From positions 1 to 64,000 of the IMG/VR virus record IMGVR_UViG_3300043570_001980: a stretch of 64,000 nucleotides of DNA. The stretch is one strand, 5' to 3'. The position numbers and the translations under genes were made by a program. Positions 17,464 through 35,751 of this stretch are shown piece by piece (position 1 is the stretch's first letter; the number at the start of each line of letters is the position of its first letter). The notes under the pieces were generated by a model. That model was not told the origin of the DNA, did not search any database, and saw only the letters and a program-made list of their open reading frames with translations.

Positions 17464-17518
17464 TGTTGTTTTTTTACAACAAATTTTGGTTGACCAATAA
17501 TTACCATTTTGCTATAAT
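17464..17518 (+). promoter_or_regulatory. Early promoter with TGTTG-N8-CAACA
   Basis: Palindrome 17464-17481; TTGACC(17490)-N17-TATAAT(17513). Confidence 0.85.
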
Positions 17519-17524
17519 AATAAC

Positions 17525-17758
17525 ATGAAATTAGATACTAACGAAATACTACAATGGGCAGGTGCCGTGTTTATAGTAGCAGGGCACAGTTTAAACGCCG
17601 TCGGACCCGAGGCTTATCCCTACAATATCCTTACATTTTTTATAGGAACCATACTGTTTCTAGCATGGACTGTGCGTGTTGTAAATAAACCACAGATGTT
17701 TGTAAATCTTGTAAGTGTAGCAATTGGTTTTTCTGGGCTGGTAAAAGCATACAGTTGA
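17525..17758 (+). CDS. Small 3-TM membrane protein
   Basis: 77 aa hydrophobic; ATG at predicted +1. Confidence 0.75.
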   Translation: MKLDTNEILQWAGAVFIVAGHSLNAVGPEAYPYNILTFFIGTILFLAWTVRVVNKPQMFVNLVSVAIGFSGLVKAYS

Positions 17759-17783
17759 CCAATAATTGCCAATTTGCTATAAT
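17755..17783 (+). promoter_or_regulatory. Early sigma70 promoter
   Basis: TTGACC-N17-TATAAT. Confidence 0.85.
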
Positions 17784-17789
17784 ACGAGT

Positions 17790-17915
17790 ATGAAAACAAA
17801 AAAGGAACCAAAGATGCCAAAACAAAAAAAGAAAACCCTGGGTGAACTTTTACGTAAGAAGTTGGGACTCAAACCAACCCTGAATCAGTTATTGATAAAA
17901 CGGTTGACCAAATAA
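17790..17915 (+). CDS. 41-aa basic peptide
   Basis: MKTKKEPKMPKQKKKTLGELLRKKLGLKPTLNQLLIKRLTK*. Confidence 0.45.
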   Translation: MKTKKEPKMPKQKKKTLGELLRKKLGLKPTLNQLLIKRLTK

Positions 17916-17932
17916 TCCCAATTTGCTATAAT
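17904..17932 (+). promoter_or_regulatory. Early sigma70 promoter
   Basis: TTGACC-N17-TATAAT. Confidence 0.85.
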
Positions 17933-17962
17933 ACTTGTATAGTAATTAAAAAGGAGCCACAA

Positions 17963-18340
17963 ATGACTACAGAACTTAAATCGTGGGACGAGATGTCGGA
18001 TTTGGAACAAGCCCAATGCACATTTTGGGACATGTACAAGGATGCCTACGGCTTTCGTCCCCGTGGTATTGATACATCCGCTTGGACTCTTGACGATTTT
18101 ACATCTGAGTTTGTGGTCCTGGGTCAAGCCATTGAGCGTGAAGAAACTGCTCGCAAGGCCGCTGAAGCTGAGGCTATCGACAAGTTTGAGCGTCATGTGG
18201 TCAATACCATCTGTATGGGTGCTGGCAACCGTGAGACAGCACTTCGTTGGATCATGGATGCCTCTAACGCCAATGGCGACTGGGAATACCTGTGCTACGA
18301 TCTGGGTTTGCCCTACCAATACTTTCGCAAAGTGGCTTAA
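17963..18340 (+). CDS. Hypothetical early protein
   Basis: 125 aa; AAAGGAG SD. Confidence 0.8.
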   Translation: MTTELKSWDEMSDLEQAQCTFWDMYKDAYGFRPRGIDTSAWTLDDFTSEFVVLGQAIEREETARKAAEAEAIDKFERHVVNTICMGAGNRETALRWIMDASNANGDWEYLCYDLGLPYQYFRKVA

Positions 18341-18352
18341 GGTGTTGTCAGC

Positions 18353-18559
18353 ATGAATATCTCAAGAGCGGAACAAAGTGCTATAAAGTACAATACCGAA
18401 CAGTATCGGTTGGATCAGGCTCGTTTGGAAAAGCAACGGGAACAAGATTACAGTAAAAAAATTGAACAACGACGACTTGACCAAATCATTGCAGAGCGAG
18501 TAAGTAGAAACCTTCGTTTAGATTTAGACAAAGGTCGTAATATTGATATTGAATGTTAA
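18353..18559 (+). CDS. Hypothetical charged helical protein
   Basis: 68 aa in operon. Confidence 0.65.
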   Translation: MNISRAEQSAIKYNTEQYRLDQARLEKQREQDYSKKIEQRRLDQIIAERVSRNLRLDLDKGRNIDIEC

Positions 18560-18569
18560 GGAAACAACC

Positions 18570-18863
18570 ATGACTACCATCCAAGAAATTAATAGTGCAA
18601 TCATTGCCGGATCATTTACCAATGATGAGCTGGTTAGCATTGGTGATGCAATTAGATTTGCCCGAACCCAACTTACCCAACAAAAGAAACGAAGTGTGAC
18701 CATTGGTAGTACTGTAAAGTTTACCAGTGCCAAACGTGGAGTAACTGTTGTTGGTACTGTGGAAAAGATTGCTATCAAATACATTACAATTCGCGAATCT
18801 AATAATGGTCGATTGACCACTGGGTTGTGGAAAGTTCCTGCTAACATGTTAGAGGTGGTATGA
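18570..18863 (+). CDS. Hypothetical protein (SH3/KOW-like C-terminus)
   Basis: AAGGA SD; IGSTVKF...GTVEKIAIKYITI. Confidence 0.65.
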   Translation: MTTIQEINSAIIAGSFTNDELVSIGDAIRFARTQLTQQKKRSVTIGSTVKFTSAKRGVTVVGTVEKIAIKYITIRESNNGRLTTGLWKVPANMLEVV

Positions 18864-19018
18864 CTGCTAAACCGTTTCGTCAATGGCTCAATGATCTCTG
18901 GAGAGACAACTGCGACGAACACGACGGTTGGGGACAGCCACGTTTGACCATGAAAGAATATTTTCAAAAATACAAATATTGGCTCAAACGTGAGTATCGA
19001 CATCAGACAAAAGGATAA
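18860..19018 (+). CDS. 52-aa hypothetical protein
   Basis: MTAKPFRQWLNDLWRDNCDEH...; ATGA-coupled. Confidence 0.6.
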   Translation: MTAKPFRQWLNDLWRDNCDEHDGWGQPRLTMKEYFQKYKYWLKREYRHQTKG

Positions 19019-19022
19019 TTTT

Positions 19023-19205
19023 ATGTCAAAGCTTTTTCTCGCAATTCTATTCATTGTATTTTTGGTCGTCATTGGCCCTATTGTAACCATTTGGTCATTG
19101 AACACATTGTTTCCTGCGTTGGCTATTCCTTACTCGTTTGAGACTTGGTTGGCTATAGTAGTGATAGGTGGCGTATTCAAATCTAGTGTGACGGTGAACA
19201 AATGA
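19023..19205 (+). CDS. Small 2-TM membrane protein
   Basis: Hydrophobic, 60 aa. Confidence 0.7.
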   Translation: MSKLFLAILFIVFLVVIGPIVTIWSLNTLFPALAIPYSFETWLAIVVIGGVFKSSVTVNK

Positions 19206-19558
19206 AGGCATATCTCGAAGTGACTGAATGGGCCGACGAGTTCCCAAATCATGTTTACTTTCTAAATGATTCCAAAAGCAAAATGTATGCTTATGTACGG
19301 CATGGCACCAACTCTCCGTTCAAATTTAAAAAGCCCATTGGATTTAATGTACGTGGTCGTAAATTTGTTGAAGTGCCAAATTCATGGAAATTCCAGGCCA
19401 AAGAGGAACAACCTGAAGGTCGTGTGTGGATAGTAACGGGCAGTCGCGGAGATGAATACAAAGTGTCCGAACTCAACGGAACCTATTCTTGCACTTGTAG
19501 TGGTTTTAGATTTCGAGGCGACTGTAAACATATCAAAATGAATATCAATGCAGATTAA
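19202..19558 (+). CDS. SWIM zinc-finger protein
   Basis: CTCSGFRFRGDCKH. Confidence 0.8.
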   Translation: MKAYLEVTEWADEFPNHVYFLNDSKSKMYAYVRHGTNSPFKFKKPIGFNVRGRKFVEVPNSWKFQAKEEQPEGRVWIVTGSRGDEYKVSELNGTYSCTCSGFRFRGDCKHIKMNINAD

Positions 19559-19669
19559 TTGGCAAACTGTTTTAACTTAGTTTGCCAAACACTATTGCAT
19601 ATCTACACTAAACGTAATATAATAACACATGATGTAAAACAAAACATCATTTTATTTTAAATCTGAAAG

Positions 19670-19948
19670 GTGAAAACTGTGAAACATTTTAACGAAACTA
19701 CCAAAACTTACAAGGTCTTCCGTGCCTTACAAAGCGGTGAAACACTCAGCCCAGCTGAAGCCAAGAAACGCTTTGGCGTTGGTAACTTGGGTGCTGAAGT
19801 AAGCCGCATCCGCCAAAACGGCTTTGCTGTTTATGCCAATAGCCGCACAGCTGGCAATGGCATTCGCGTAACTGAGTACGCACTTGGCAAACCAAGTCGC
19901 AAGATTGTAGCCGCTGGTTACAAGGCTTTGGCCCTGGGTCTGGTCTAA
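19670..19948 (+). CDS. Small helix-turn-helix protein
   Basis: LSPAEAKKRFGVGNLGAEVSRIRQNG; upstream TTGCAT...TATAAT promoter-like element. Confidence 0.65.
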   Translation: MKTVKHFNETTKTYKVFRALQSGETLSPAEAKKRFGVGNLGAEVSRIRQNGFAVYANSRTAGNGIRVTEYALGKPSRKIVAAGYKALALGLV

Positions 19949-19998
19949 TCTAATTTAGACCCAAATTCGCTGTCCAGCCCAAACTGGACACATTTGCC

Positions 19999-20023
19999 AA
20001 AAGCCCTACCAAGTAGGGCTTTT
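19999..20023. terminator. Bidirectional terminator
   Basis: AAAAGCCCTAC-CAA-GTAGGGCTTTT. Confidence 0.9.
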
Positions 20024-20033
20024 GCTTGACCAA

Positions 20034-20693
20034 TTAATCAAAACTTGGAAAACCTTTAAACTCCGGGGCTTGATAATCTGGATCATAATATGGAATGATT
20101 GAAAAAGTCACAGCTCCCGGTGTAGTAGCAATCAGGTCTCGTTTGACAGCCATTACTGTTTCAATATTGTAATAGTTGAAGTTGGGGTCAATGGGCTCAT
20201 CATATTTGTAAAAGGATCCCAGTTGTCCATCATTATTGATCTTGTAGTTTGCATCCACACAACCTGAAAATGTATGCCAATCCTCACTGAATGCCAGTGG
20301 GTAATCTCCAACAATCAATCTCCATCCTGGAGCCATCTTTGCCCGCCAGGGCAATGCCATAAGGACTATTTTCCAAACATATTCTCCAGAAGAATTTTTT
20401 TCGCACCACTTGGTACCATGCAACTGCTCAGGATGAAATACCACGTGACCTCCAACATATGGGTACTTTGGATCAATAATGGTCCATCCCACACTATTAA
20501 TACCACGCAAGCCTAAACATACTCGAGCTGTGTGATTTTGCATATGACCTTGGGGTAAGTAATGTCTAACGTCAGCTTTGAGATTTTTGAACCAATCTGG
20601 GTAATAGTCACCTAATCTAAATGGTGGATCCAAAAAATTAACAGCATTAGAAGCACGTTGCCAAGTTAACCAATTAGTAGCAGAAAATTCCAT
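20034..20693 (-). CDS. Hypothetical protein
   Basis: 219 aa; TAAATA at 20701-20706 (-). Confidence 0.7.
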   Translation of the reverse strand: MEFSATNWLTWQRASNAVNFLDPPFRLGDYYPDWFKNLKADVRHYLPQGHMQNHTARVCLGLRGINSVGWTIIDPKYPYVGGHVVFHPEQLHGTKWCEKNSSGEYVWKIVLMALPWRAKMAPGWRLIVGDYPLAFSEDWHTFSGCVDANYKINNDGQLGSFYKYDEPIDPNFNYYNIETVMAVKRDLIATTPGAVTFSIIPYYDPDYQAPEFKGFPSFD

Positions 20694-20720
20694 TGTGCGA
20701 TATTTAACCTTGTACTACAC

Positions 20721-20749
20721 TTGACTAACAAATCATTTTAGTGTATAAT
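20721..20749 (+). promoter_or_regulatory. Sigma70 promoter
   Basis: TTGACT-N17-TATAAT; ATG at 20756. Confidence 0.85.
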
Positions 20750-20755
20750 TTATAT

Positions 20756-21205
20756 ATGATTAAAAAACTCATGCATCGACTAGGCCGATATCGGTTGATT
20801 CTGGATCGACAATCAAATGAACCATATCTAGAACGCTACTATGTGTTCCTTAAAGATCGTACATGGTTTCCGTTTAACATTTTTGTACATAAGTTTCTCA
20901 AAAGCGATCCCGATGATGTACATGATCATCCATGGCCTTATGCTACTGTAATTTTGAAAGGTGGATACTATGAATGGATTCCTCAGTTTAATTCAAACGG
21001 CGAAAAAATTGGCGAGATTGCAAAGTGGCGAGCTCCTGGTCATTTTAGGATTTGTAGTGCTACTAGTTATCACAGGATTGAACTAGATCCCACAGTAGAA
21101 TGTTGGACCATGTTCATGCCTGGTCCTCAAAAACGTGAATGGGGATTTTTAGTCAACAACAAATGGATACAACACGAACAATATCTTAACAATCGTGCCA
21201 AATAA
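20756..21205 (+). CDS. Cupin-fold protein
   Basis: HDHPW...LKGGYYE...YHRI metal-binding cupin pattern. Confidence 0.7.
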   Translation: MIKKLMHRLGRYRLILDRQSNEPYLERYYVFLKDRTWFPFNIFVHKFLKSDPDDVHDHPWPYATVILKGGYYEWIPQFNSNGEKIGEIAKWRAPGHFRICSATSYHRIELDPTVECWTMFMPGPQKREWGFLVNNKWIQHEQYLNNRAK

Positions 21206-21923
21206 AAACTTGCGTAAAGGTATAATTTTCCCCAGGGGCGGTTGTGGCAATCATTTGAGATGGTTGCTGTCTCTTGATGACAAATGTAACTACGCTGATA
21301 TTTTTAATATTGATATTGACAATACTGTCAGTGCCAAAATTGAATTTATTCGCAGAAAAGTTTATAACTCCGGCCGTAATCAAAAAAATTGGTTGAAAAA
21401 AGAATTTTTACATAGAGAAAAATTAGATTCTTTTATGCAGATATTACACACACATGATTGGCCGACCTATGATTATGATAAGCTATTGATATTGGATTTT
21501 GACAATGAAAAAAGTTGTTTAGCACACTACTTGAATGTTCATCCAACACTGGGTGGTAGACCAGTGCAACAATACATAGATGATTTCAATGCCTTTAAAT
21601 CCAGCATTCAAGGCAACGACTGGAGAGAATTCTATCAAGGAATCAAAGAAGAAAACTGGCCCTGGTATGACTCTGCTAAAGAATTTTATGAAACAGCACC
21701 CACAACAGTAATCGCAGAAGCAGTAGAAGTTCATAATTTAGTAAAACATGTTCGTCCTGTACCTGACGAATATTGTGTTGTGAACGCAGAGTCTTTGCAT
21801 AATATTGATTTAAATAAAGATCTATACACAAAATGTACTGAGTACTTTGAATTTGAAGAACACTACGAGTCTGCCGCAGAGATTCACAAGTTGTATTGGG
21901 ATTGTAGAAAGCGTATGGGATAA
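21195..21923 (+). CDS. Hypothetical protein (sulfotransferase-like N-terminal loop)
   Basis: FPRGGCGNHLRWLL. Confidence 0.6.
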   Translation: MPNKNLRKGIIFPRGGCGNHLRWLLSLDDKCNYADIFNIDIDNTVSAKIEFIRRKVYNSGRNQKNWLKKEFLHREKLDSFMQILHTHDWPTYDYDKLLILDFDNEKSCLAHYLNVHPTLGGRPVQQYIDDFNAFKSSIQGNDWREFYQGIKEENWPWYDSAKEFYETAPTTVIAEAVEVHNLVKHVRPVPDEYCVVNAESLHNIDLNKDLYTKCTEYFEFEEHYESAAEIHKLYWDCRKRMG

Positions 21924-21927
21924 AATA

Positions 21928-22251
21928 ATGGAATTGAACGATTTTTTATTAGGCACATTATTTGGAATTATTGTTTGCATGTGGCTGGGATATATTGTGT
22001 TGGGCCGACTTGCAGACATGCTAATTAATGCAAACAGTCAAGAAACTCGTGAAGCGTCAGAGTTAGTTATTAGAGCACGAATAGAAGAAGTTGGTGGCAT
22101 GTTTTACGTTTGGAATACAGACAACAATGAATTTGTAGTGCAAGGACGATCAGTTAAAGAGATGCAGGACAAACTGTCAAATAAACAATTACAAATTAAG
22201 ATCACTGACGGTGATGACGCTGTTATTCAGCGATTTAAGTCTACTGGTTGA
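21928..22251 (+). CDS. Hypothetical protein with N-terminal TM
   Basis: 107 aa. Confidence 0.65.
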   Translation: MELNDFLLGTLFGIIVCMWLGYIVLGRLADMLINANSQETREASELVIRARIEEVGGMFYVWNTDNNEFVVQGRSVKEMQDKLSNKQLQIKITDGDDAVIQRFKSTG

Positions 22252-22259
22252 TCTGACAA

Positions 22260-22433
22260 ATGATGGTGTTCGATTCCTGGAAACTACTGGAAATTTCCAA
22301 TTGGTTATCTAGTATTGGGTTTGAAACTGGTCAAGATTATTGTTGGGCTTGGTACAACAATTCCTGGGCTATTAAATTTAAAGATACAAAAAAGGAAATG
22401 GTAGCAATGTTAAAGTGGAAAGAAATGAAATGA
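22260..22433 (+). CDS. 57-aa protein of the ...LKW family
   Basis: MMVFDSWKLLEISNWL...WAIKFKDTKKEMVAMLKWKEMK*. Confidence 0.55.
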   Translation: MMVFDSWKLLEISNWLSSIGFETGQDYCWAWYNNSWAIKFKDTKKEMVAMLKWKEMK

Positions 22434-23170: not shown

Positions 23171-23640
23171 TGGGAGACCAGCCAAACTCTGCCAAAGGTC
23201 GAACCAGTTTTGATGTTGCCACAGGCAACACACTGATTCATTTCTTTAATAGGAACGTAACTCCTTACGCAACTGAATCTGGTGGACCTAAATTTGATCT
23301 GGTACCAGTTACCAAACAAAAAGATATAATGATCAATCATGCCAGGATCTATGCCCAGCAAGAATATGATCGTATTATGGAACTGGTTGCAGTATTGGAA
23401 AAACAAGCACAGGATATCAAACGTAGACTAGATGTTACAGATGCTGTGCATGCGGCCGAATATCAATTTCAAGTTGTAATGGGACAATGTTATTGGTTGG
23501 CCTGGGATAAACGAAAAGAAAAGATGTTGCTAACACATCACGGCCCTAATGATTGGAATACCGGTGCACCAGTTGATTATGAGTATATAACTCAAGTAAA
23601 ATACATGGGTGACCATACCTGGATGGAAATTGACAAATAA
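23170..23640 (+). CDS. Hypothetical protein (DUF2452-like)
   Basis: TPYATESGGPKF...coiled coil...FQVVMGQCYWL. Tentative. Confidence 0.6.
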   Translation: MGDQPNSAKGRTSFDVATGNTLIHFFNRNVTPYATESGGPKFDLVPVTKQKDIMINHARIYAQQEYDRIMELVAVLEKQAQDIKRRLDVTDAVHAAEYQFQVVMGQCYWLAWDKRKEKMLLTHHGPNDWNTGAPVDYEYITQVKYMGDHTWMEIDK

Positions 23641-23658
23641 TACAACTTGTGCTATAAT
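23630..23658 (+). promoter_or_regulatory. Sigma70 promoter
   Basis: TTGACA-N17-TATAAT. Confidence 0.85.
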
Positions 23659-23660
23659 GA

Positions 23661-24906: not shown

Positions 24907-24918
24907 TTATCAAATTAG

Positions 24919-28232: not shown

Positions 28233-29263
28233 TGTACTTTTGCATCGCTGAACAAGAGCTCACAGAGTTCCCATATCGTCATCAACTGGCCCCTCATCTT
28301 TGGGTTAATGCCTACTATGATATTAATCAAGATAAATTTTTTGGTTATCGTTTAGGCGAGCACGGAGGAAACTTTGTTGAGTTTGAGTTTGGTGACGAAG
28401 AAGTCACAGTTGAGTTTAGTTTTTATAAAGACTTTAATCTTGGGTTTGGCAAAGGCATTATTCTTACCAATATTAACAAGTACATAGACACAGCAATATC
28501 TCCGTTGACGGTTAAATTTAATTGTCACGACGAGCTAGGAATCAATTGGTTACAGTATAAAAAAATCAAATCTGCTATTGTTCCTGAAATTAAAACTTGG
28601 GAACAGGTACTTGTTGACATTGAGCTAAGGTTATTGTCTAATTTACAAACTTGCGCAAACATCAGTGATAAAACACAGATTGCATTCTCGGGCGGACTTG
28701 ACTCCAGTACCCTTGCGTTTTTGGCATTGCATCATCAGGTTGAGTTTACTGGAGTTGTAGCCAATCACACAAGGTTTTATTTTAACAAACTTCCATTTGA
28801 CGTAGTCTACAGTGACACTCAAGAAACAATAGATTATCCGTATAGTCAGTTAGACAATGTCAAGCCGGCATTTTACAATACAAATAATTTAATCACAGGA
28901 TACTACGGCGATCTGGCACTCTTGCATCACGGTGAACTGTACGCACAATCTTCAAAGTTGGTCAATCAAATATTTGACTGTTACGATACTGCAATCTATC
29001 TGCCAGAACATACATTTGACAATGTTAATTCATTGAGATCAGCAATTGTTAAATTGCATTCTCAACCAACGTTCCAGCAATGGTTTGGTGATTTTCAAAT
29101 ACTAGATCCCTACAGAGACCCTGAATTGTTTTTGACTGTGATCAGTTTAGACACAGAAGATCTGGTTAAACAACTAGCCACGGGACAGTTACAGAAAGAT
29201 TTAATCGATCGCTGGAATCCTGATTGGCTTTCTCATATCTGCAAACATAAAAATGAATACTGA
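28232..29263 (+). CDS. Asparagine synthase-like PP-loop protein
   Basis: IAFSGGLDSS; ITGYYGD; DPYRD. Confidence 0.7.
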   Translation: MYFCIAEQELTEFPYRHQLAPHLWVNAYYDINQDKFFGYRLGEHGGNFVEFEFGDEEVTVEFSFYKDFNLGFGKGIILTNINKYIDTAISPLTVKFNCHDELGINWLQYKKIKSAIVPEIKTWEQVLVDIELRLLSNLQTCANISDKTQIAFSGGLDSSTLAFLALHHQVEFTGVVANHTRFYFNKLPFDVVYSDTQETIDYPYSQLDNVKPAFYNTNNLITGYYGDLALLHHGELYAQSSKLVNQIFDCYDTAIYLPEHTFDNVNSLRSAIVKLHSQPTFQQWFGDFQILDPYRDPELFLTVISLDTEDLVKQLATGQLQKDLIDRWNPDWLSHICKHKNEY

Positions 29264-29954
29264 TTATACTTTTGTTTCCTACAATGGCGGCTCAGCTGGT
29301 GATTTGTTTGTGACCAGTTGCAATGGAATAAAGCTAACCAAAATATCCGGTATCAGCGTTCCTACTGATCATTCTTTAAAAAAGTTTGAAAGAAAAATAC
29401 AAGACAACGAAATGTCAGTGTTGGATGCTGTTCAGCAATTACCTGTACCCCCAAATGGTTTTGTTAGCACACATTTATTTGAACCAATTATCAACAGCAA
29501 CTGGTCATTGATTAATATTGTAGTCACTGACCCACAGGTACAAGAGCAGATAGTTCTAAGACAAATGAAACTGCAAAAACTTGCTATCAAAGTTGCACCT
29601 GGCGAATCTTGGTTTGAGATAGCTAAAACTCTTTGCCTCAATGGAAAGTTTGAAAAAGCCGCTTCGTATTGGTTTGAACAATCAAAAAGATTATGGATGC
29701 AGACCATGTACGATCGTGTTGCAAATACCTACGGTAAAAACATTAATTTTAACTTGTTGTTTAAAGAAAATTTTGTCAATAACCTACAGCAACAAGGCTG
29801 GACGACCAACATTGATGTGTTGGCAGAAAATCATCGACGTTGGATTAAAAAGAACGCAGAGTTTTCCAAAGAAGAAACACTGACTGCTATTGCAAAGAAA
29901 TTGTCAACCATGGACTGGACTGCTGAATCTGGTTATATAGATTTTGTTGCGTAA
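29253..29954 (+). CDS. Hypothetical protein
   Basis: FVSYNGGSAGD, a degenerate Gly-rich loop. Confidence 0.65.
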   Translation: MNTDYTFVSYNGGSAGDLFVTSCNGIKLTKISGISVPTDHSLKKFERKIQDNEMSVLDAVQQLPVPPNGFVSTHLFEPIINSNWSLINIVVTDPQVQEQIVLRQMKLQKLAIKVAPGESWFEIAKTLCLNGKFEKAASYWFEQSKRLWMQTMYDRVANTYGKNINFNLLFKENFVNNLQQQGWTTNIDVLAENHRRWIKKNAEFSKEETLTAIAKKLSTMDWTAESGYIDFVA

Positions 29955-30028
29955 AAACAACACTATAAAACTGCTTAAAAATTAAGCAGAAATCTGTGGT
30001 TGACCAGAATTCCCTGTTTTGTTATAAT
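29945..30028 (+). promoter_or_regulatory. Early promoter with two upstream palindromes
   Basis: TGTTG-N8-CAACA (29945), CTGCTTAA-AAA-TTAAGCAG (29971), TTGACC(30000)-N17-TATAAT. Confidence 0.85.
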
Positions 30029-30055
30029 AGAAGTTATAGCAACAAGGAGCAACGC

Positions 30056-30457
30056 ATGGAATTTTATGTTGAAGGCAATCCCAAAGCCAAAAAATACGTA
30101 GAAGCACTTCTACCTTCTATGATAGAGCAATTGAAGCTCGTAAAACATAAAAAACTCCTGCACATCATATTAGATCCTGACCTTGAAGACCTGGGCACCA
30201 CAGTTCCTCTCAAAGGTTTGGACACCTATTTGATTGTGCTCAAACCCGTTAAGGATCTTCAGGCCATGGGTGCCACCCTGGCGCACGAGCTCACTCATGT
30301 GGCACAGTTTGCCAAAGGCACCTTGCAGTTGACACCACGTGGCAAGCTGTGGAAAGGCAAGTACTACGGACGCAAAGTCCCGTATCTGGAACAGCCTTGG
30401 GAAATACAGGCATTTTCCAAACAAGAAATCTTGTTCCGCAGAGCCATTGAACTCTGA
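30056..30457 (+). CDS. HEXXH zinc metallopeptidase-like protein
   Basis: TLAHELTHVAQ...PWEIQA. Confidence 0.8.
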   Translation: MEFYVEGNPKAKKYVEALLPSMIEQLKLVKHKKLLHIILDPDLEDLGTTVPLKGLDTYLIVLKPVKDLQAMGATLAHELTHVAQFAKGTLQLTPRGKLWKGKYYGRKVPYLEQPWEIQAFSKQEILFRRAIEL

Positions 30458-30459
30458 TC

Positions 30460-30563
30460 TGTTGCGTAAAAACAACACTCAATCTGCTTAAAAAATAGAC
30501 AGAAAGTGTTGTTTTTTCACAACACACAAAACAGTTGACCAGAATTACCCATTTTGCTATAAT
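30460..30563 (+). promoter_or_regulatory. Early promoter with upstream palindromes
   Basis: TGTTG-N8-CAACA at 30460 and 30507; TCTG...CAGA at 30483; TTGACC(30535)-N17-TATAAT. Confidence 0.85.
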
Positions 30564-30594
30564 AGAAGTATAGTAAGAAACAAAGGAGTTAGAT

Positions 30595-30873
30595 ATGTCA
30601 TACGTAATTGTCTCAAAAGGTACTGGTTTAATCGTTACCGACGGTCCCAACAAGACTCGTGCCTACAAAACATTTGGTGCCGCCAAAGCAACTCGTACCC
30701 GTCTCTGCAACAAAGCAGGTTGGAACGAAAGCCAACTGAACATTGTGAGCCGTGACACTTACACGGCACCCAAGATCACTGTTCGTAATTTGATGACAGG
30801 CAAGCCAGTGAAAATTGACGCTGACACACCTTGGGCTTGCCGAGTTGACAGCGAAGCCTACTGGAGCAATTGA
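30595..30873 (+). CDS. Hypothetical early protein
   Basis: AAAGGAG SD; 92 aa. Confidence 0.75.
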   Translation: MSYVIVSKGTGLIVTDGPNKTRAYKTFGAAKATRTRLCNKAGWNESQLNIVSRDTYTAPKITVRNLMTGKPVKIDADTPWACRVDSEAYWSN

Positions 30874-30874
30874 T

Positions 30875-31135
30875 ATGCGATACGGTAACATGCCTTACAA
30901 ATATCGAGTGGTAACTAAGGTATCATCTAAGGAAGATGCTATCACAGATGTATTTGGACGTCAAATTTTGTTGACAACAAATAACTATCAAACAGCTCGC
31001 AAAGAGTGTATTGAGTGGGCCGCTTATGATGACATTCTTGTGCATGTGATCAACCAGTTTGGCTCTAGCAAATTCTCATGTGACGGAGCCAGTGAGGCTT
31101 ACGATCGTTATCCTAAAACAGCGGAGACAGTATAA
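30875..31135 (+). CDS. Hypothetical protein
   Basis: 86 aa from MRYGNM. Confidence 0.65.
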   Translation: MRYGNMPYKYRVVTKVSSKEDAITDVFGRQILLTTNNYQTARKECIEWAAYDDILVHVINQFGSSKFSCDGASEAYDRYPKTAETV

Positions 31136-31278
31136 TGAAAGTCGTATATAATGGTTTGTTGGGTGGCTGGTACATTGTGCGTGGAGCCCACCAAACACCT
31201 ATCAGTGGTAGGTTCGACAGCAAAGAATCGGCACTGGCTCATTTGCGTAGACGCAACCCTTTCCATACCGGAGTTTAA
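31135..31278 (+). CDS. 47-aa hypothetical protein
   Basis: MKVVYNGLLGGWYIVRGAHQTPISGRFDSKESALAHLRRRNPFHTGV*. Confidence 0.6.
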   Translation: MKVVYNGLLGGWYIVRGAHQTPISGRFDSKESALAHLRRRNPFHTGV

Positions 31279-31282
31279 TACA

Positions 31283-31483
31283 ATGCATCAAAACGTAGAT
31301 AACCTTATTATTAAATTTGCGGAAATCCTGGACAGAGATCCCTTGGATCAGATGGAGGACACCTACTCCATTCTGCGCAAATTTACAGAAGCCATTGCTC
31401 AAGACTGTATGTCCAACTTGTATCTGAATGGATACGACGATGCAATGATGCAGATAAAACAACATTTGGGAATTGAAAAATGA
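31283..31483 (+). CDS. Hypothetical protein
   Basis: 66 aa from MHQNVD. Confidence 0.6.
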   Translation: MHQNVDNLIIKFAEILDRDPLDQMEDTYSILRKFTEAIAQDCMSNLYLNGYDDAMMQIKQHLGIEK

Positions 31484-31788
31484 AAAAATTAATCAGAGAC
31501 GGTAAAGTAGCAGTATTGTACTCGCCCGGCTTTGGTGCTGGTTGGTCAACTTGGAATCAAGAGTTGCCCGAGCTGGTGTTCAATCCTGTGATTGTTGATT
31601 TTGTAGAAAAAGAACAATGGGATGAATTAGCAGTTTACGTTAGCCTCAAGTATCCTGACATCTACGACGGTGGCATGAGAGATCTAGAAATTGCCTGGCT
31701 TGATGTGGGTGCTGAATTTAGAATCCACGAGTACGACGGTAGCGAAAGCATTGAAGTCAAAGAAGAATTGATGTGGTTGGTTGCGTAA
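31480..31788 (+). CDS. Hypothetical protein
   Basis: VAVLYSPGFGAGWSTWN...EYDGSESI. Confidence 0.75.
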   Translation: MKKLIRDGKVAVLYSPGFGAGWSTWNQELPELVFNPVIVDFVEKEQWDELAVYVSLKYPDIYDGGMRDLEIAWLDVGAEFRIHEYDGSESIEVKEELMWLVA

Positions 31789-31797
31789 GGAAATAAA

Positions 31798-32094
31798 ATG
31801 ACAGTAGAATACGGAACTTGTCCTGTGTGCAACGGCTCTGGTCGTGTGACGCCAAGCCCTGAACAACAAAAATACAAACATGTCTATTCAGGCTACGACA
31901 AAGACACAGACACCCTAGGTTGTTCCAATTGTGGCGGCCAGTACATGTACGGCACCCCACGTGGCAAAGTCCGATTGAACGCACAAGGTGATCCATGCAC
32001 TCACCATTATCAAAGCAGTAATGCCGGGCGATGTTTGACCAATTATGATTGTGTCCACTGTGGCGATCGTTATCAAATTGATTCGGGTGACTAA
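31798..32094 (+). CDS. Multi-CxxC zinc-finger protein
   Basis: CPVCNGSG, CSNCGG, CxH, CVHCG. Confidence 0.75.
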   Translation: MTVEYGTCPVCNGSGRVTPSPEQQKYKHVYSGYDKDTDTLGCSNCGGQYMYGTPRGKVRLNAQGDPCTHHYQSSNAGRCLTNYDCVHCGDRYQIDSGD

Positions 32095-32342
32095 TGAAAA
32101 CCACACGAGTTGATGGCGGTAAAATTAGTTGGACCGATGAGTGGAAGGTTGGTGCTGTGGCAACAGCCACCGAGATGTTTGGCCTCCCGGGTACCCAAGC
32201 AGGTCGACGTTGGTTTTATCGTGTGCAATTTCTCAACGAAGAATGGCGCAGAAAAGGCAGAAAATCAGAGTTAAAAGTTCTGTTGTATTTTCGCAACACA
32301 GTAGATGCCACGTTTTTCTGCTTAAAAAAGTCGCAGAAATAG
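32094..32342 (+). CDS. Small protein of the ...FxLK family
   Basis: Ends LYFRNTVDATFFCLKK. Confidence 0.6.
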   Translation: MKTTRVDGGKISWTDEWKVGAVATATEMFGLPGTQAGRRWFYRVQFLNEEWRRKGRKSELKVLLYFRNTVDATFFCLKKSQK

Positions 32343-32375
32343 CTGGTTGACCAGAATTGCCCATTTTGCTATAAT
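32281..32375 (+). promoter_or_regulatory. Early promoter with upstream palindromes
   Basis: TGTTG-N8-CAACA (32281), CTGC-N11-GCAG near 32318, TTGACC(32347)-N17-TATAAT. Confidence 0.85.
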
Positions 32376-32404
32376 ACTTGTATAGTAAACAAAAAGGAGC
32401 TGGT

Positions 32405-32668
32405 ATGTTAAAATTTGCAAAGATTGCTCAAGTCGGTGACACCATCCGTGCATATGATTTCAAGCCGTTGATAGGCCGCGAAGATTGTTTTGTTGAAGGT
32501 GTTGTTCAAAAAATTGACAACCGTGGCTACGATTGTTTTGTGATTGTAGTGACCAAAGACAGCTGGTCAGATGCTGAAGATGCTGGCCGTGTTGGCAAAG
32601 AAGTGTTTGTTCCATTTGAAGTCAGCTTCATGGAATTTGATGCCCGTGTTATGAATCTCAGCCGCTAA
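32405..32668 (+). CDS. Hypothetical early protein
   Basis: AAAGGAG SD. Confidence 0.75.
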   Translation: MLKFAKIAQVGDTIRAYDFKPLIGREDCFVEGVVQKIDNRGYDCFVIVVTKDSWSDAEDAGRVGKEVFVPFEVSFMEFDARVMNLSR

Positions 32669-32680
32669 AAGGAAATCAAA

Positions 32681-32932
32681 ATGCGTCACGTATCTGGTTT
32701 TAGCAACAGCACCCGAATTCGTTTTATCATTGACGGATTTGGTATGTATGCAACCATCAATGATGTTTTTACAAAAACAGCCACAGTATCGCATGGTGCG
32801 GCTCTGCGATATGCTGTGGAGTATCTGGCAGAAATTCGTCGTCGTAGTCCAGTTCTGGGCGAAAGCCGTCCAGTGGGCACCGTGATTACACACGAAGGTC
32901 ACCAGGTCCAAATCAATTTGATGGCCAATTGA
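32681..32932 (+). CDS. Hypothetical protein
   Basis: AAAGGA SD; 83 aa. Confidence 0.7.
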   Translation: MRHVSGFSNSTRIRFIIDGFGMYATINDVFTKTATVSHGAALRYAVEYLAEIRRRSPVLGESRPVGTVITHEGHQVQINLMAN

Positions 32933-32938
32933 TTTTGG

Positions 32939-32967
32939 TTGACCAATAATTCCCAATTTGCTATAAT
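32939..32967 (+). promoter_or_regulatory. Early sigma70 promoter
   Basis: TTGACC-N17-TATAAT. Confidence 0.85.
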
Positions 32968-32999
32968 ATACACATACACTAACAAAACAGGAGCAGAAA

Positions 33000-33407
33000 A
33001 TGGCATATATCGGAGCACAAGAAGTCAAGTCAATTCGCGACGCACTCAAAGCACAATTCCCCAAGTTTAAATTCAGTGCCCGTAAAGGCAGTGGTTCACT
33101 CAGCGTTGAAGTCACTGTTAAATCTGGTCCTATTGATTTCTTTGAAAATCACAATCAGACCATAGATCACCGTCATGTTGACAGTCGTCTTGCAGAAGGT
33201 TACATGCAGATTAACCCCTACTGGTTCCAAGATCATTTTACTGGCGAAGCCAAGGATGCAATTGATCAGTTCTTGCGTATCATCAAGACTGCACCCGAGC
33301 GTCAGTGGTACGACCGCAGTGATGCAATGACAGATTATTTTGACACCGCTTTTTACATTCACCTGAATATTGGTGAGTGGAGCAAGCCCTACGTATTAGT
33401 TAAGTAA
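33000..33407 (+). CDS. LPD29-like early protein
   Basis: IRDALKAQFPKFKFSAR...WYDRSDAMTDYFDTAFY. Tentative. Confidence 0.6.
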   Translation: MAYIGAQEVKSIRDALKAQFPKFKFSARKGSGSLSVEVTVKSGPIDFFENHNQTIDHRHVDSRLAEGYMQINPYWFQDHFTGEAKDAIDQFLRIIKTAPERQWYDRSDAMTDYFDTAFYIHLNIGEWSKPYVLVK

Positions 33408-33419
33408 ACAGGAGACACC

Positions 33420-34151
33420 GTGAATCCCAAGACTTATTTTCACCCAGCAAATGGTTACAATCCTCGTTATGGTGTTCGTCGCACCAAAGCTACAGTGAAT
33501 TCATTTAAGTATTCTGTTGATGATGTTTGGGGTGCGGCTGTAGCGGCACAACGTGTTAACGGAGAATATCTCAAAGAAGATAAGACCAATATAACTGAAG
33601 ATGGTTCCTATGAGACTCTCCAGAAGCGCAATCGTGACATCATGATGGACTTCCTGGCTGTGCCCGGTACCATCACCGACGAGGATCGTTTGATTGGTCG
33701 CGAGTGCCGTAGATTCTTGCAAAATGATCTTACCTTCCGTGCGCTCAAAGGCCAGCTCAGTGCATTTGATGCAAGTGTCAGCCGGGTTGTGGCTGTTGAA
33801 GATGAATTTGATACTGTACAACATCGACTGGAATTGGCTGTGGTTGCATGTTTGCCACAGAGCCATCAACGTGCATTGGTGCGCCAGTCAATCCAGGACC
33901 GTGTACGCAATGCCAGCGGCGGCTATGTTGGCAATGTCAGCGACAAAGTAGCATTAGATGCAGAAGTTGTGAGTGCCAACTGGAGCAACACATACAACAT
34001 TTTTTGGGTCACTGCAATTACCCAAGATAATCGAGCCTTGTTTTTCAGCTACAAATCTCAGCTGAATTCAGGTATCCAAATCAAATTGATTGGTACTGTA
34101 AAAGCTCATCGTGACAACAAAACCCAACTCAATCGTGTTAAGGTGTTATAA
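33420..34151 (+). CDS. Hypothetical protein with C-terminal OB-fold-like region
   Basis: GTVKAHRDNKTQLNRVK ending; GTG start with AGGAG SD. Confidence 0.7.
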   Translation: MNPKTYFHPANGYNPRYGVRRTKATVNSFKYSVDDVWGAAVAAQRVNGEYLKEDKTNITEDGSYETLQKRNRDIMMDFLAVPGTITDEDRLIGRECRRFLQNDLTFRALKGQLSAFDASVSRVVAVEDEFDTVQHRLELAVVACLPQSHQRALVRQSIQDRVRNASGGYVGNVSDKVALDAEVVSANWSNTYNIFWVTAITQDNRALFFSYKSQLNSGIQIKLIGTVKAHRDNKTQLNRVKVL

Positions 34152-34399
34152 TGTTTGATAAAGATATTAATATTAGTAATCTCACTGGTCGTCAGGTTGA
34201 AATGCTGGACATAATGTGGAGTCTTGAACACTATGAAGACATAGAAGCTTGGCAGGCAACTTTAGATCTTCAAGAACGAGAAATGAGCGAAACACTCATG
34301 CGATTGATTTTGCTAGAACTAGTTGACGAAACCATTAATGCTATTAACAAAGAAGACTTGTCCTTGGCCAAAGACTATTTGAAAAAGTTTCAACTATGA
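34151..34399 (+). CDS. Hypothetical protein
   Basis: 82 aa. Confidence 0.7.
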   Translation: MFDKDINISNLTGRQVEMLDIMWSLEHYEDIEAWQATLDLQEREMSETLMRLILLELVDETINAINKEDLSLAKDYLKKFQL

Positions 34400-34737
34400 A
34401 TCCCAAAGACCATCAATTTTTGGCCATGTGGGACTGCTACGGTCTTGAGACCTTGATTGACATTACCGAAACTCAGGGCGCCAAAGTTTGGGCCGCACTA
34501 AAAGGTGAACCCGATACTGTGAGGATTCCCAATTTGATGCACCTTGAACTCAGAGCACGTTATAATAGTCAACGACACTACGAAATTTATATTTTTAATG
34601 CTCAAGAAGGCATTACCAAAGATGACATTCAGGATATGTTTGATGCTGATCCGCAGACAGCCGCAGATACTATTCGCAGGATCGGTCATCGTTATTACAG
34701 CAATCGACGTGACGAACATGCAATTGCAATTAGATAA
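34396..34737 (+). CDS. Hypothetical protein
   Basis: 113 aa. Confidence 0.7.
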   Translation: MNPKDHQFLAMWDCYGLETLIDITETQGAKVWAALKGEPDTVRIPNLMHLELRARYNSQRHYEIYIFNAQEGITKDDIQDMFDADPQTAADTIRRIGHRYYSNRRDEHAIAIR

Positions 34738-34748
34738 GGAGCGCCAGC

Positions 34749-35171
34749 ATGGGACTTGATATGTATGCATACGTGGCTGCCAGAGCTGGACAACAAAGTG
34801 AGTTTTACGAGGGTGCCGAATTTGACCAAGATTCTAGGGATTTTGTCAACAAGGTAGTATCTAAACCACGTGAACTTGCTTACTGGCGCAAGCACCCTAA
34901 CCTGCATGGTTGGATGGAACAACTGTGGAATCAACGCAACGGTGGCAATCAGGATGGCAACACCTTTAATGGTATTGAACTTGAGTTAACTTATGATGAT
35001 TTAGAACGACTTGAGCTTGATGTCATTGCAGGTACATTACCAGGTACATCTGGATTCTTTTTTGGTGATGATGCAGATGACCACTATCAAGATCAAGATC
35101 TTGAATTTATACGGAACGCTCGAGCTGAGTTGTTCATGGGATTGAAAGTATTTTATAATTCTTCATGGTAA
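34749..35171 (+). CDS. Conserved-type phage protein (MGLDMY...YWRKH)
   Basis: MGLDMYAY, LAYWRKHPNLHGW, YNSSW ending. Confidence 0.8.
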   Translation: MGLDMYAYVAARAGQQSEFYEGAEFDQDSRDFVNKVVSKPRELAYWRKHPNLHGWMEQLWNQRNGGNQDGNTFNGIELELTYDDLERLELDVIAGTLPGTSGFFFGDDADDHYQDQDLEFIRNARAELFMGLKVFYNSSW

Positions 35172-35177
35172 CATTGT

Positions 35178-35597
35178 ATGAAAATTGGACTTAGTTACAG
35201 CCGTTGTGTCCGAGATATTGTGGACGGTCGAGTAGACATCAACGACGTTTTGATTATCATCAGTCGCACGGATTTTGATCCTCACGATGATGAACAATGG
35301 GCTGGTATCTGGCAAGGATATCATCAGAGTAGCGGTTGGAGTAATCCCGAATGGGGCCACTATACAGACGAAGATGAAGCTAAGTTTCGTAGTGTCAGCA
35401 TTGAACTTTGGGAATCAGGTAAACTGCACCAACCACGCAAGTTTGGTGCTCATCCAGCTCGCCGCTCTGAGATTTGGCTTGAGGCAGTACTGCCCAGCAG
35501 TGAACTCAAACGCAACCCTGCGGCCCAGGATGCCTGGAATCGTTTCCAAACCATTGCAGGTCTGACCAATGTTAAATTGGACAAAGACTACCAATAA
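35178..35597 (+). CDS. Hypothetical protein
   Basis: 139 aa. Confidence 0.75.
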   Translation: MKIGLSYSRCVRDIVDGRVDINDVLIIISRTDFDPHDDEQWAGIWQGYHQSSGWSNPEWGHYTDEDEAKFRSVSIELWESGKLHQPRKFGAHPARRSEIWLEAVLPSSELKRNPAAQDAWNRFQTIAGLTNVKLDKDYQ

Positions 35598-35602
35598 AAT
35601 GG

Positions 35603-35751
35603 TTGACCAATTAATTGATTCGTGCTATAATACATACATGGACAAAAAATTAACCAGTTTTGAGCGGGTAAATATGTTGCAAAAAAACAACACATTTGCT
35701 TGCTCAAATATAGCAGGAAAGGTTGACACAAAAACCCTTTTTTGCTATACT
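35603..35751 (+). promoter_or_regulatory. Tandem sigma70 promoters with a palindrome between them
   Basis: TTGACC(35603)-N17-TATAAT; TGTTG-N8-CAACA (35675); TTGACA(35723)-N17-TATACT. Confidence 0.85.

What the first reader, a model, noticed from the sequence alone, without database searches (positions are those of the whole stretch)
17464..35751. Conserved upstream palindrome code on a family of early promoters
Seen: TGTTG-N8-CAACA with an A/T-tract core at 17464, 29945, 30460, 30507, 32281 and 35675, each within about 10-75 bp upstream of a TTGAC-N17-TGC/TGT-TATAAT-type promoter. A second element CTGC-N11-GCAG, or a variant, lies near 29971, 30483 and 32318. The copy at 32281 is kept inside coding sequence. 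Inference: operator for a dimeric phage or host regulator (candidates: HTH 19670, AbrB-like 37048), or bent-DNA UP elements. Shared spacer sequences also suggest that promoter cassettes spread by recombination.
Basis: partly seen in the sequence, partly recalled or inferred. Interest (0 to 1): 0.6.

Follow-up and report, generated by a model that had tools for sequence, protein, structure and literature searches.

The report
Upstream palindrome on phage early promoters
An 18-bp palindrome (TGTTGY, six A/T-rich bases, RCAACA) sits just upstream of about a quarter of the bacterial-type promoters of an uncultivated 342-kb lake phage and of hundreds of promoters in its relatives; it is most likely the docking site of a still unidentified dimeric regulator.

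Summary
All six listed copies exist at the stated coordinates: the window holds 7 matches against 0.27 expected. Each listed copy lies 8-57 bp upstream of a near-consensus TTGAC-N18-TATAAT promoter.

The window is the start of a 341,990-bp lake-water jumbo myovirus. In the whole genome, 15 of 20 matches to TGTKG-N8-CMACA lie within 95 bp upstream of such promoters (P about 1e-21).

The true motif is TGTTGY-N6-RCAACA with an A-tract centre. In 200 distinct promoter-linked copies from related viral contigs, the unselected Y and R positions hold in every one.

It is not a hairpin. The stems are weak, 23% of sites carry half-sites that cannot pair, and other pairable variants never occur. It is not a classical operator either, because it never overlaps the core promoter. 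The commonest gap to the -35 is 9-10 bp, which puts the centre near -54.

Half-sites change 1 in 130 positions against 104 in 1541 in the flanks, compared with a 90%-identical relative.

Best reading: the site of a sequence-specific dimer acting from upstream, like the P2 Ogr sites (TGT-N12-ACA), but no Ogr homologue is encoded. The reader protein is unknown. The HTH at 19670 is a single-copy winged helix modelled as a homodimer, with nothing tying it to the motif. The CTGC element is part of one four-copy cassette. Recombination at the cassettes is seen, but rarely.

The parts
17464..17481 (.). Palindrome copy of the proximal class. The gap to the -35 is 8 bp and the centre is about -52.
   Evidence: In the 90%-identical relative G001 the half-sites are unchanged and one spacer base differs.
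17490..17518 (+). Sigma-70-type promoter (TTGACC, 17-bp spacer, TATAAT). An ATG follows 6 nt after the -10 at 17525, so the mRNA is probably leaderless.
29945..29962 (.). Palindrome copy of the distal class, with a 37-bp gap. The TAA stop of ORF 29253-29954 lies in its spacer.
29971..29989 (.). Second element, CTGCTTAAAAA..GCAG (CTGC-N11-GCAG). It fills the slot 10 bp upstream of the -35.
   Evidence: There are only four promoter-linked copies in the genome, all next to a TGTTG palindrome.
30000..30028 (+). Sigma-70-type promoter with a Shine-Dalgarno sequence. The downstream ORF starts at 30056 and is a weak match to a putative metallopeptidase family.
30460..30477 (.). Palindrome copy with the same 18-mer as 29945. 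It is distal (57-bp gap) and lies 2 nt after the stop of ORF 30056-30457.
   Evidence: The identical 18-mer stands at the syntenic place in relative G002, whose polymerase is 82% identical.
30484..30502 (.). Variant of the second element (CTGC-N11-ACAG).
30507..30524 (.). Palindrome copy of the proximal class, with a 10-bp gap and its centre at about -54.
30535..30563 (+). Sigma-70-type promoter. In relative G001 an extra gene with its own copy of this cassette is inserted here.
32281..32298 (.). Palindrome copy inside the 3' end of ORF 32094-32342, with a 48-bp gap.
32318..32336 (.). Second element (CTGC-N11-GCAG), 10 bp upstream of the -35.
32347..32375 (+). Sigma-70-type promoter.
35675..35692 (.). 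Palindrome copy between two promoters. It lies 30 bp upstream of the -35 at 35723 and downstream of the promoter at 35603.
35723..35751 (+). Sigma-70-type promoter (TTGACA, 17-bp spacer, TATACT). It drives a conserved 119-aa protein with a Lys/Ala-rich tail (35817-36176).
19670..19948 (+). Candidate reader protein with no demonstrated link to the motif: a 92-aa winged helix (HTH_39), single-copy in the genome.
   Evidence: Pfam E 3e-7. Single copy. A homodimer model scored ipSAE 0.58 against a best control of 0.00; that mark was reached by 20 of 30 proteins solved as pairs of one chain and by 1 of 23 proteins solved as single chains; the runs agree in at least 93% of contacts and pLDDT is at least 85. 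Homologues lie in 25 of 151 related loci but never directly behind a palindrome promoter.
37048..37221 (+).
   Evidence: PF04014 E 0.007, below the family cut-off; PHROG 661, function unknown.
17677..17694 (.). Match to the relaxed pattern that lies in coding sequence (ORF 17525-17758). It is probably not a functional site.
   Evidence: It is kept in relatives as part of the protein-coding sequence.

Best explanation
The 18-bp element TGTTGY-(A/T-rich N6)-RCAACA is the binding site of a sequence-specific, two-fold symmetric DNA-binding protein. That protein is most likely encoded by the phage family itself.

The site is placed on the upstream side of a subset (about a quarter) of the promoters that the host's primary-sigma RNA polymerase reads. 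Its favoured place is 9-10 bp upstream of the -35, centred near -54.

From there the bound dimer would touch the polymerase, plausibly the alpha C-terminal domain, and tune initiation or timing of these promoters. Because the core promoters are already near consensus, it could hold the polymerase back as readily as help it.

Shown:
- the motif itself and its link to promoters;
- its position relative to the -35;
- conservation of the half-sites;
- independence from base pairing.

Inferred:
- that a protein binds;
- which protein it is;
- contact with the polymerase;
- the sign of the effect;
- that the promoters are early.
For: - Enrichment and promoter link.
- Family-wide spread. The contigs are distant relatives, with about 45-60% amino-acid identity and GC of 33-52%.
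- In 200 distinct sites, position 6 is always C or T and position 13 always A or G, although neither was part of the search pattern.
- Purifying selection. Half-sites changed at 1 of 130 positions, flanks at 104 of 1541 (Fisher P 0.004), against a relative that is about 90% identical.
- Base identity matters, not pairing. At position 4/4' the counts are T..A 53, G..A 12, T..C 9 and G..C 8. The other pairable combinations (A..T, C..G) score 0 of 91.
- Hairpin energies run from 0 to -5 kcal/mol, against -12.5 for the real terminators next door.
- Position. No copies fall at gaps of 0-4 bp; the mode is 9-10 bp; only 1 of about 330 copies overlaps the core promoter.
- Only 28 single hits turned up in 596 Gb of bacterial genomes, so no bacterial regulon of this kind was seen.
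- The form matches a known system: P2 late promoters carry TGT-N12-ACA for the Ogr activator (PMC3931495).
Against: - No binding protein is identified. Ogr_Delta, HTH_3, HU and sigma-70 domains are absent from the genome.
- The core promoters are near consensus and should not need an activator.
- The A-tract shows an orientation bias at the main position (63 A-rich against 16 T-rich). A purely symmetric reader does not predict this.
- Distances to the -35 range from 5 to more than 60 bp. Helical phasing is only suggestive: not significant in one data set, P 0.014 in another.
- Complete relatives G002 and G003 keep the winged-helix gene but have only one or two copies of the motif.
- The family-wide sites are not independent, and the scans were capped.
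Confidence: 0.5

Rival explanations
1. The element is a factor-independent UP element or bent-DNA module. The central A-tract lies at about -57 to -50 and is read by the polymerase alpha C-terminal domain. The CA/TG-rich arms only shape the bend.
For: - At a gap of 9-10 bp the A/T core falls where the distal UP subsite lies in E. coli (own knowledge of the Estrem et al. consensus).
- The stretch between palindrome and -35 is also A/T-rich.
- The A-rich strand is biased at that position.
- In four cassettes the CTGC element, which also has an A-tract core, occupies the same slot.
- A reader present in all bacteria would explain conservation across phages of differing GC.
Against: - UP elements have no invariant G/C-containing arms, yet TGTTGY/RCAACA holds in 200 of 200 sites and is selected.
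- Many copies lie 30-60 bp from the -35, out of reach of an unaided alpha domain.
- Promoters without the palindrome show no conserved A-tract upstream.
Confidence: 0.2
2. The element is the site of a host transcription factor that this phage family has recruited onto its promoters.
For: The motif is the same across diverged phages from lake water, which could share a host group. TGT-N12-ACA is also the form of the PpsR/CrtJ sites of purple bacteria.
Against: - Phage GC ranges from 33 to 52%, which suggests several hosts.
- No bacterial genome has more than one copy of the composite.
- Cultured relatives on Sinorhizobium, Agrobacterium, Xanthomonas, Vibrio and Pectobacterium show no enrichment.
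- PpsR sites overlap core promoters, and these do not.
- The host is unknown, so this cannot be excluded.
Confidence: 0.15
3. The element is the stem-loop part of PeSL-like mobile promoter cassettes. It would be a weak terminator or a recombination linker, possibly the target of a nuclease such as the conserved, leaderless GIY-YIG-like gene that often lies behind it.
For: - The cassette layout of terminator, palindrome, promoter and Shine-Dalgarno sequence resembles PeSLs (PMC2839356, PMC4122927).
- Some differences from G001 end at cassettes, at 30555/30597, 125088 and 252180. One homology break lies inside the 117710 palindrome.
- A GIY-YIG-like gene of about 110 aa sits directly behind a palindrome promoter in about 17 related loci.
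Against: - The stems are weak, there is no U-run, and 23% of sites have unpairable arms.
- Real GC-rich terminators stand beside the palindrome at three promoters.
- Only 8% of indel edges lie within 80 bp of a promoter, against 4% of random positions.
- The GIY-YIG assignment is weak (best E 6e-5).
Confidence: 0.1

Closest known systems
Ogr/delta-dependent late promoters of P2-like phages and P4
   Same: Both have a hyphenated dyad of the form TGT-N12-ACA upstream of the promoter (PMC3931495). From my own knowledge of the Christie/Calendar work, that dyad is centred near -55 and the activator acts through the polymerase alpha subunit. Here the main class is centred at about -52 to -55.
   Different: - No Ogr_Delta zinc-finger protein is encoded.
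- The core promoters here are near consensus, whereas P2 late promoters have poor -35 regions.
- The arms are longer (TGTTGY) and there is an A-tract core.
- The phage is a T4-superfamily jumbo myovirus, not a P2-like phage.
PeSL cassettes (promoter-early stem-loops) of T4-type phages
   Same: Both are repeated composite cassettes with an inverted repeat, an A/T-rich stretch, a strong sigma-70-like promoter and a Shine-Dalgarno sequence, placed between small genes in variable regions. Both sometimes lie at gene insertions or replacements between close relatives (PMC2839356, PMC4122927).
   Different: - PeSL stem-loops are effective GC-rich terminators. This palindrome is not a stable hairpin, and real terminators are separate from it.
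- The association with indel junctions is weak here.
UP elements of strong bacterial and T4 early promoters
   Same: Both are A/T-rich tracts at about -40 to -60 upstream of a strong promoter.
   Different: The invariant G/C-containing symmetric arms are not part of any UP consensus. Many copies also lie too far upstream.
phi29 protein p4 sites on early and late promoters
   Same: From my own knowledge, p4 is a phage dimer bound to an inverted repeat with A-tracts upstream of promoters. It contacts the alpha C-terminal domain, activating a weak promoter and repressing a strong one by holding the polymerase. This is a model for how an upstream site could act on consensus promoters.
   Different: The sequence is unrelated, the host is Gram-positive, no p4 homologue was looked for, and nothing was tested here.

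Membership tests
PeSL (T4-type promoter-early stem-loop cassette) | A strong sigma-70-like promoter with a Shine-Dalgarno sequence, repeated between small genes | tested here: met
   There are 39 exact and about 50 real promoters, nearly all on the + strand, with a shared spacer consensus.
PeSL (T4-type promoter-early stem-loop cassette) | The adjacent inverted repeat is a stable stem-loop that terminates transcription | tested here: not met
   Core hairpins fold at 0 to -5 kcal/mol against -12.5 for neighbouring terminators, and no U-run follows. 21 of 91 sites have arms that cannot pair.
PeSL (T4-type promoter-early stem-loop cassette) | Cassettes mark insertion, deletion or replacement junctions between close relatives | tested here: inconclusive
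   8% of 96 junction edges lie within 80 bp of a promoter, against 4% of random positions. There are a few clear cases.
PeSL (T4-type promoter-early stem-loop cassette) | Formation of cassette-flanked mini-circles during infection | not testable with these tools
   This needs an infected culture; the phage is uncultivated.
Ogr/delta-activated promoters (P2/P4) | A TGT-N12-ACA dyad upstream of the promoter | tested here: met
   TGTTG-N8-CAACA has this form.
Ogr/delta-activated promoters (P2/P4) | The dyad is centred near -55 | tested here: met
   Six genome copies lie at -52 to -55. The family-wide modal gap is 9-10 bp. Other positions also occur. The P2 figure comes from my own knowledge.
Ogr/delta-activated promoters (P2/P4) | An Ogr/Delta zinc-finger activator is encoded | tested here: not met
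   PF04606 gave no match at E up to 1 in the 342-kb genome.
Ogr/delta-activated promoters (P2/P4) | An activator-dependent core promoter with a poor -35 | tested here: not met
   All true sites stand upstream of TTGAC(A/C/T) -35 elements and TATAAT-like -10 elements.
UP element | An A/T-rich tract between about -40 and -60 | tested here: met
   The spacer is 82-85% A/T and lies at about -57 to -50 in the main class.
UP element | Recognition rests on A/T tracts alone, with no conserved G/C-containing arms | tested here: not met
   TGTTGY and RCAACA are invariant in 200 sites and conserved against relative G001.
Classical repressor operator | The site overlaps the -35, the -10 or the transcription start | tested here: not met
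   Only 1 of about 330 promoter-linked copies lies between -60 and +5 bp relative to the start of the -35. None lies at a gap of 0-4 bp.
PpsR/CrtJ sites of purple bacteria | Paired TGT-N12-ACA palindromes over the core promoters of photosynthesis genes, read by host PpsR | tested here: inconclusive
   The dyad form matches, but the position does not. The host is unknown.

The most novel reading that the evidence does not exclude
A large, uncultivated family of freshwater jumbo phages carries its own promoter 'address code'. A phage-encoded dimer, possibly the single-copy HTH_39 winged helix, would read TGTTGY-N6-RCAACA from about -54 on otherwise consensus host-type promoters and so set apart one class of early genes. 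Sister lineages have replaced or supplemented this code with others: GTTAGTG-N2-CACTAAC in G002 and AGTACTAC/TAATACT in G003. This points to diversifying reader-site pairs that could time expression or separate co-infecting relatives.
Probability: 0.2. Interest if true: 0.75.

Novelty: new variant of a known kind. Interest (0 to 1): 0.6.

Why it matters
Early promoters of T4-superfamily phages are thought to be read by unmodified host polymerase through sigma-70 hexamers and A/T-rich upstream DNA alone.

Here a strictly conserved symmetric element marks a defined subset of such promoters. It is kept across hundreds of sites in a widespread lake phage family. That implies an extra, unrecognised layer of early gene control, or an unusual polymerase-DNA contact, in phages that have never been cultured.

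The motif is short, sharply defined and easy to test. It could be used to fish out its reader protein, to annotate promoters and early gene sets in metagenomic jumbo phages, and to follow how promoter cassettes move genes between relatives.

Tried and rejected
- Nucleotide and protein searches of the region against cultured phages found nothing. Only the DNA polymerase placed the phage: 51% to Sinorhizobium phage Phosso and 42-46% to Atu_ph07 and the Rak2/CBB group.
- The hairpin/terminator reading is rejected.
- The classical operator reading is rejected.
- I looked for Ogr/Delta, Sigma70_r2, Sigma70_r4, HU and HTH_3 domains in the genome and found none.
- Helical phasing of the distal copies was not significant in the first data set (P 0.17-0.33). 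It was suggestive in an unbiased 0-30 bp sample (best period about 11 bp, P 0.014, exploratory). I do not claim it.
- Genome-wide enrichment of cassettes at indel junctions is weak.
- A full-text search for the motif written in several ways returned only PpsR and P2 papers on TGT-N12-ACA.
- No RNA runs hold the region; all 24 holders are lake-water DNA. Laying contigs showed only that the promoter core is shared by many contigs. The 'joints' there are paralogous cassettes, not deletions.
- The T4-type late motif TATAAATA is not enriched.
- Five cultured relatives show no enrichment of the palindrome.
- I considered reading CTGCTTAAAA as a T4 MotA box. By inspection no -10-like hexamer follows at the required distance, and I did not search for MotA.
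- The 65-bp composite found only promoter-like matches in Aeromonas phages.

Not used: the large protein searches and any genetic code other than table 11.

Full report
**What the window is.** The 64-kb window is the first part of a 341,990-bp viral record, about 95% complete. It is 41% G+C and almost all genes are on the + strand, apart from a block at 160-205 kb. It encodes a family-B DNA polymerase, a tail sheath, ribonucleotide reductase and a ClpB-like ATPase. The polymerase is 51% identical to that of Sinorhizobium phage Phosso and 42-46% identical to Atu_ph07, XaC1 and the Rak2/CBB/121Q-type jumbo myoviruses. No cultured phage matches at the DNA level. The sequence recurs in at least 24 lake-water metagenome runs from 24 studies, and no RNA run holds it. 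The host is unknown.

**The observation.** TGTTG-N8-CAACA occurs 7 times in the window against 0.27 expected. It occurs 13 times in the genome against 1 for the pattern read backwards. Each is followed on the + strand by a near-consensus promoter, with gaps of 8, 37, 57, 10, 48 and 30 bp to the -35. The seventh copy, at 62205, is a chance match in coding sequence.

Allowing T/G at position 4 and its mirror adds real copies elsewhere in the genome, at about 117.7, 125.3, 126.7, 140.7, 290.6 and 322.7 kb. A one-mismatch search adds a copy at 247.7 kb. Of 20 matches to the relaxed pattern, 15 lie within 95 bp upstream of a promoter, where only 2.1% of the genome qualifies (P 1e-21). In the close relative G001 the figure is 14 of 17.

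A blind survey of every 5+5 palindrome with gaps of 0-12 ranks this one first upstream of promoters. It is found at 8 of 77 promoters against 0.19 expected in G000, and at 10 of 75 in G001. About 12 of the roughly 50 real promoters carry it.

**Anatomy.** The element is TGTTGY-N6-RCAACA with an asymmetric A-tract in the middle. I collected 200 distinct promoter-linked copies from related viral contigs using a pattern that fixed only the five outer bases of each arm. In these, position 6 is C or T in all 200 and position 13 is A or G in all 200, and the six central bases are 82-85% A/T.

In the genome, six copies are centred at -52 to -55 relative to the estimated start. The rest lie between -64 and -104. 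In an unbiased family-wide sample with gaps of 0-30 bp allowed:
- no copy lies 0-4 bp from the -35;
- the mode is 9-10 bp, with 23 of 92 copies;
- smaller groups lie at 5-6, 14-16 and 18-20 bp.

Across about 1100 promoters of the family, only one of about 330 copies overlaps the core promoter.

A roughly 11-bp periodicity is the best-fitting period in one sample (P 0.014 against a smoothed null). It is not significant in another, so I treat it as a hint only.

At the main position the A-rich strand is the non-template strand in 63 of 79 oriented sites. Part of that bias may be shared ancestry.

**Not a hairpin.** The cores fold at 0 to -5 kcal/mol, and five of 16 do not fold at all. The GC-rich terminators that stand beside three of these promoters fold at -12.5 kcal/mol and are followed by U-runs.

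I drew a capped, otherwise unselected sample of 91 family sites in which position 4 and its mirror were left free. The counts were:
- T..A 53
- G..A 12
- T..C 9
- G..C 8
- A..A 4
- A..C 2
- the other pairable combinations, A..T and C..G, 0

So which base is present (T or G) matters, not whether the arms can pair. Nearly a quarter of sites could not form the stem. This fits direct read-out by a protein.

**Selection.** The relative G001 (345 kb) is about 90% identical in DNA. At 13 orthologous sites the ten arm positions changed once in 130. The spacers changed 5 times in 104 and the 60-bp flanks 104 times in 1541 (Fisher P 0.004). The single arm change turns a hybrid site into a canonical one. 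At 117.7 kb the upstream DNA has been replaced in G001, yet a palindrome is still present.

**Spread.** Two complete genomes whose polymerase is about 80% identical, G002 and G003, have the same promoter consensus but only one or two true copies of the palindrome. One copy in G002 is the same 18-mer at the place syntenic to 30460.

These two relatives show other upstream motifs instead:
- G002 has GTTAGTG-N2-CACTAAC at five promoters.
- G003 has AGTACTAC/TAATACT at ten of 80 promoters.

Yet the palindrome-promoter composite is found in more than 119 viral-contig stretches (capped), against 28 for a control with the arms read backwards. These contigs share genes with G000-G003 at about 45-60% amino-acid identity and range from 33 to 52% G+C.

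Five cultured relatives show no enrichment. In 596 Gb of bacterial and archaeal genomes the composite occurs 28 times, never twice in one genome. Several hits sit on short contigs of freshwater metagenome bins that are probably stray phage DNA.

**The second element.** CTGCTTAAAAA..(G/A)CAG occurs in promoter context only four times per genome, in both G000 and G001. It is always 8-18 bp downstream of a TGTTG palindrome, and it is absent from G002 and G003. In three cassettes it ends 10 bp before the -35, the same slot that the palindrome occupies in the proximal class. It is best seen as part of one roughly 95-bp paralogous cassette. There is not enough variation to call it a separate signal.

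**Recombination.** Comparing G000 with G001 gives 48 junction intervals. Only 8% of their edges lie within 80 bp of a promoter, against 4% of random positions. Clear cases do exist:
- an extra gene with its own copy of the cassette inserted at the 30535 promoter;
- a 2.2-kb insertion 42 bp from a promoter at 125088;
- junctions at 213552-214379 and 252180.

The promoter spacer itself is conserved genome-wide. In lake metagenomes the 29-bp core at 32939-32967 is shared by many contigs with unrelated flanks. So cassettes do serve as patches of homology, as in the PeSLs of T4-type phages. This is a minor contributor to divergence here, and it does not explain the palindrome.

**Who reads it.** The genome has no detectable sigma-70 domains, so the promoters are presumably read by the host's primary sigma. 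That they are early is an inference from this.

Ogr/Delta, Xre-type HTH and HU domains are absent. ORF 19670 is a genuine HTH_39 winged helix (E 3e-7) and is single-copy. It is conserved in G001-G003 at 66-99% identity and present in 25 of 151 related loci, though never directly behind a palindrome promoter.

A model of two copies supports a symmetric dimer through the C-terminal helix:
- score 0.58, best of three controls 0.00;
- the mark was reached by 20 of 30 proteins solved as pairs of one chain and by 1 of 23 proteins solved as single chains;
- the runs agree in at least 93% of contacts, and pLDDT is at least 85;
- my own alignment was used, so these counts hold only roughly.

This makes it a reasonable first candidate, no more. 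ORF 37048 is only weakly AbrB/MazE-like.

The genes behind palindrome promoters are diverse. The commonest is a leaderless gene of about 110 aa, weakly GIY-YIG-like, found in about 17 loci.

**Comparison with what is known.** The form TGT-N12-ACA and the -55 position recall the Ogr/delta-dependent late promoters of P2 and P4 (the position and alpha-subunit contact are from my own knowledge). Here there is no Ogr homologue and the core promoters are strong, so it works like that system at most and is not a member of it.

The cassette layout recalls PeSLs, but the defining terminator hairpin is not met. The A-tract core recalls UP elements, but the invariant arms do not.

An upstream-bound dimer on consensus promoters could repress by over-stabilising the polymerase, as phi29 p4 does at its strong early promoter (own knowledge). 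The sign of the effect is open.

**Verdict.** This is a real, sharply defined and widely conserved upstream element of host-type promoters in an uncultivated jumbo-phage family. I rate it a new variant of known kinds (upstream activator sites, PeSL-like cassettes). Confidence in the main reading is about 0.5.

Noticed in passing
window 9917, 17490, 20721, 35603, 38520; genome 100373, 117739: Many promoters are followed by an ATG only 5-7 nt (3 nt at genome 100373) after the TATAAT hexamer, with no Shine-Dalgarno sequence. A sizeable share of the phage's genes may be translated from leaderless mRNAs. The same holds for the GIY-YIG-like gene in related contigs.
   Followed up: partly
whole genome; e.g. 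window 17490-17518, 32939-32967: The 17-bp promoter spacer is itself conserved (consensus AATAATTCCCAATTTGC between TTGACC and TATAAT), and a GG precedes the -35. In lake metagenomes the 29-bp core is shared by dozens of contigs with unrelated flanks.
   Followed up: partly
relatives G002 (e.g. 75093, 90167, 100942, 173428) and G003 (e.g. 129471, 172813, 240124, 354089), coordinates as oriented: Sister phages with the same promoter consensus carry other short motifs just upstream of the -35. G002 has GTTAGTG-N2-CACTAAC. G003 has AGTACTAC/TAATACT, in 10 of 80 promoters.
   Followed up: partly
genome 117774-118115 (L012:2774-3115): A conserved protein of about 110 aa, weakly GIY-YIG-like (best member E 6e-5, PF01541). 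It is always leaderless and lies directly behind a palindrome promoter in about 17 related loci. No homologue was found in cultured phages.
   Followed up: partly
genome 160000-205000, minus strand: The minus-strand block has no sigma-70-type promoters. The T4-type late motif TATAAATA occurs only 12 times in the whole genome, so the late promoters of this phage are of an unknown kind.
   Followed up: no
genome 180532-194814, minus strand: A single open reading frame of 4760 aa.
   Followed up: no
genome about 236488-240777: An 18-20-mer family (GATGTTGCCTGTGGCAAC and neighbours) is repeated up to 8 times. The repeats probably lie in a 1429-aa ORF and code for protein repeats.
   Followed up: no
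window 29945-29962 and 32281-32342: The TAA stop of ORF 29253-29954 lies inside the palindrome spacer. ORF 32094-32342 runs through a whole cassette, so the cassettes supply the 3' ends of upstream genes.
   Followed up: partly
window 35817-36176: A 119-aa protein with a Lys/Ala-rich C-terminal tail lies behind the 35675 palindrome and the 35723 promoter. It is 77-80% identical in G002 and G003, about as conserved as the polymerase, and has no family match. It may be a DNA-binding early protein.
   Followed up: no
loci L422, L425, L427, L431, L432, L438, L439, L446: Short contigs with the palindrome-promoter composite are filed in freshwater metagenome bins labelled Bacteroidota or Planktophila. 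They are probably mis-binned phage fragments and a poor guide to the host.
   Followed up: no
window 14292-15599; genome 104221-106101: The phage encodes a radical SAM/SPASM protein and a B12-binding radical SAM protein.
   Followed up: no
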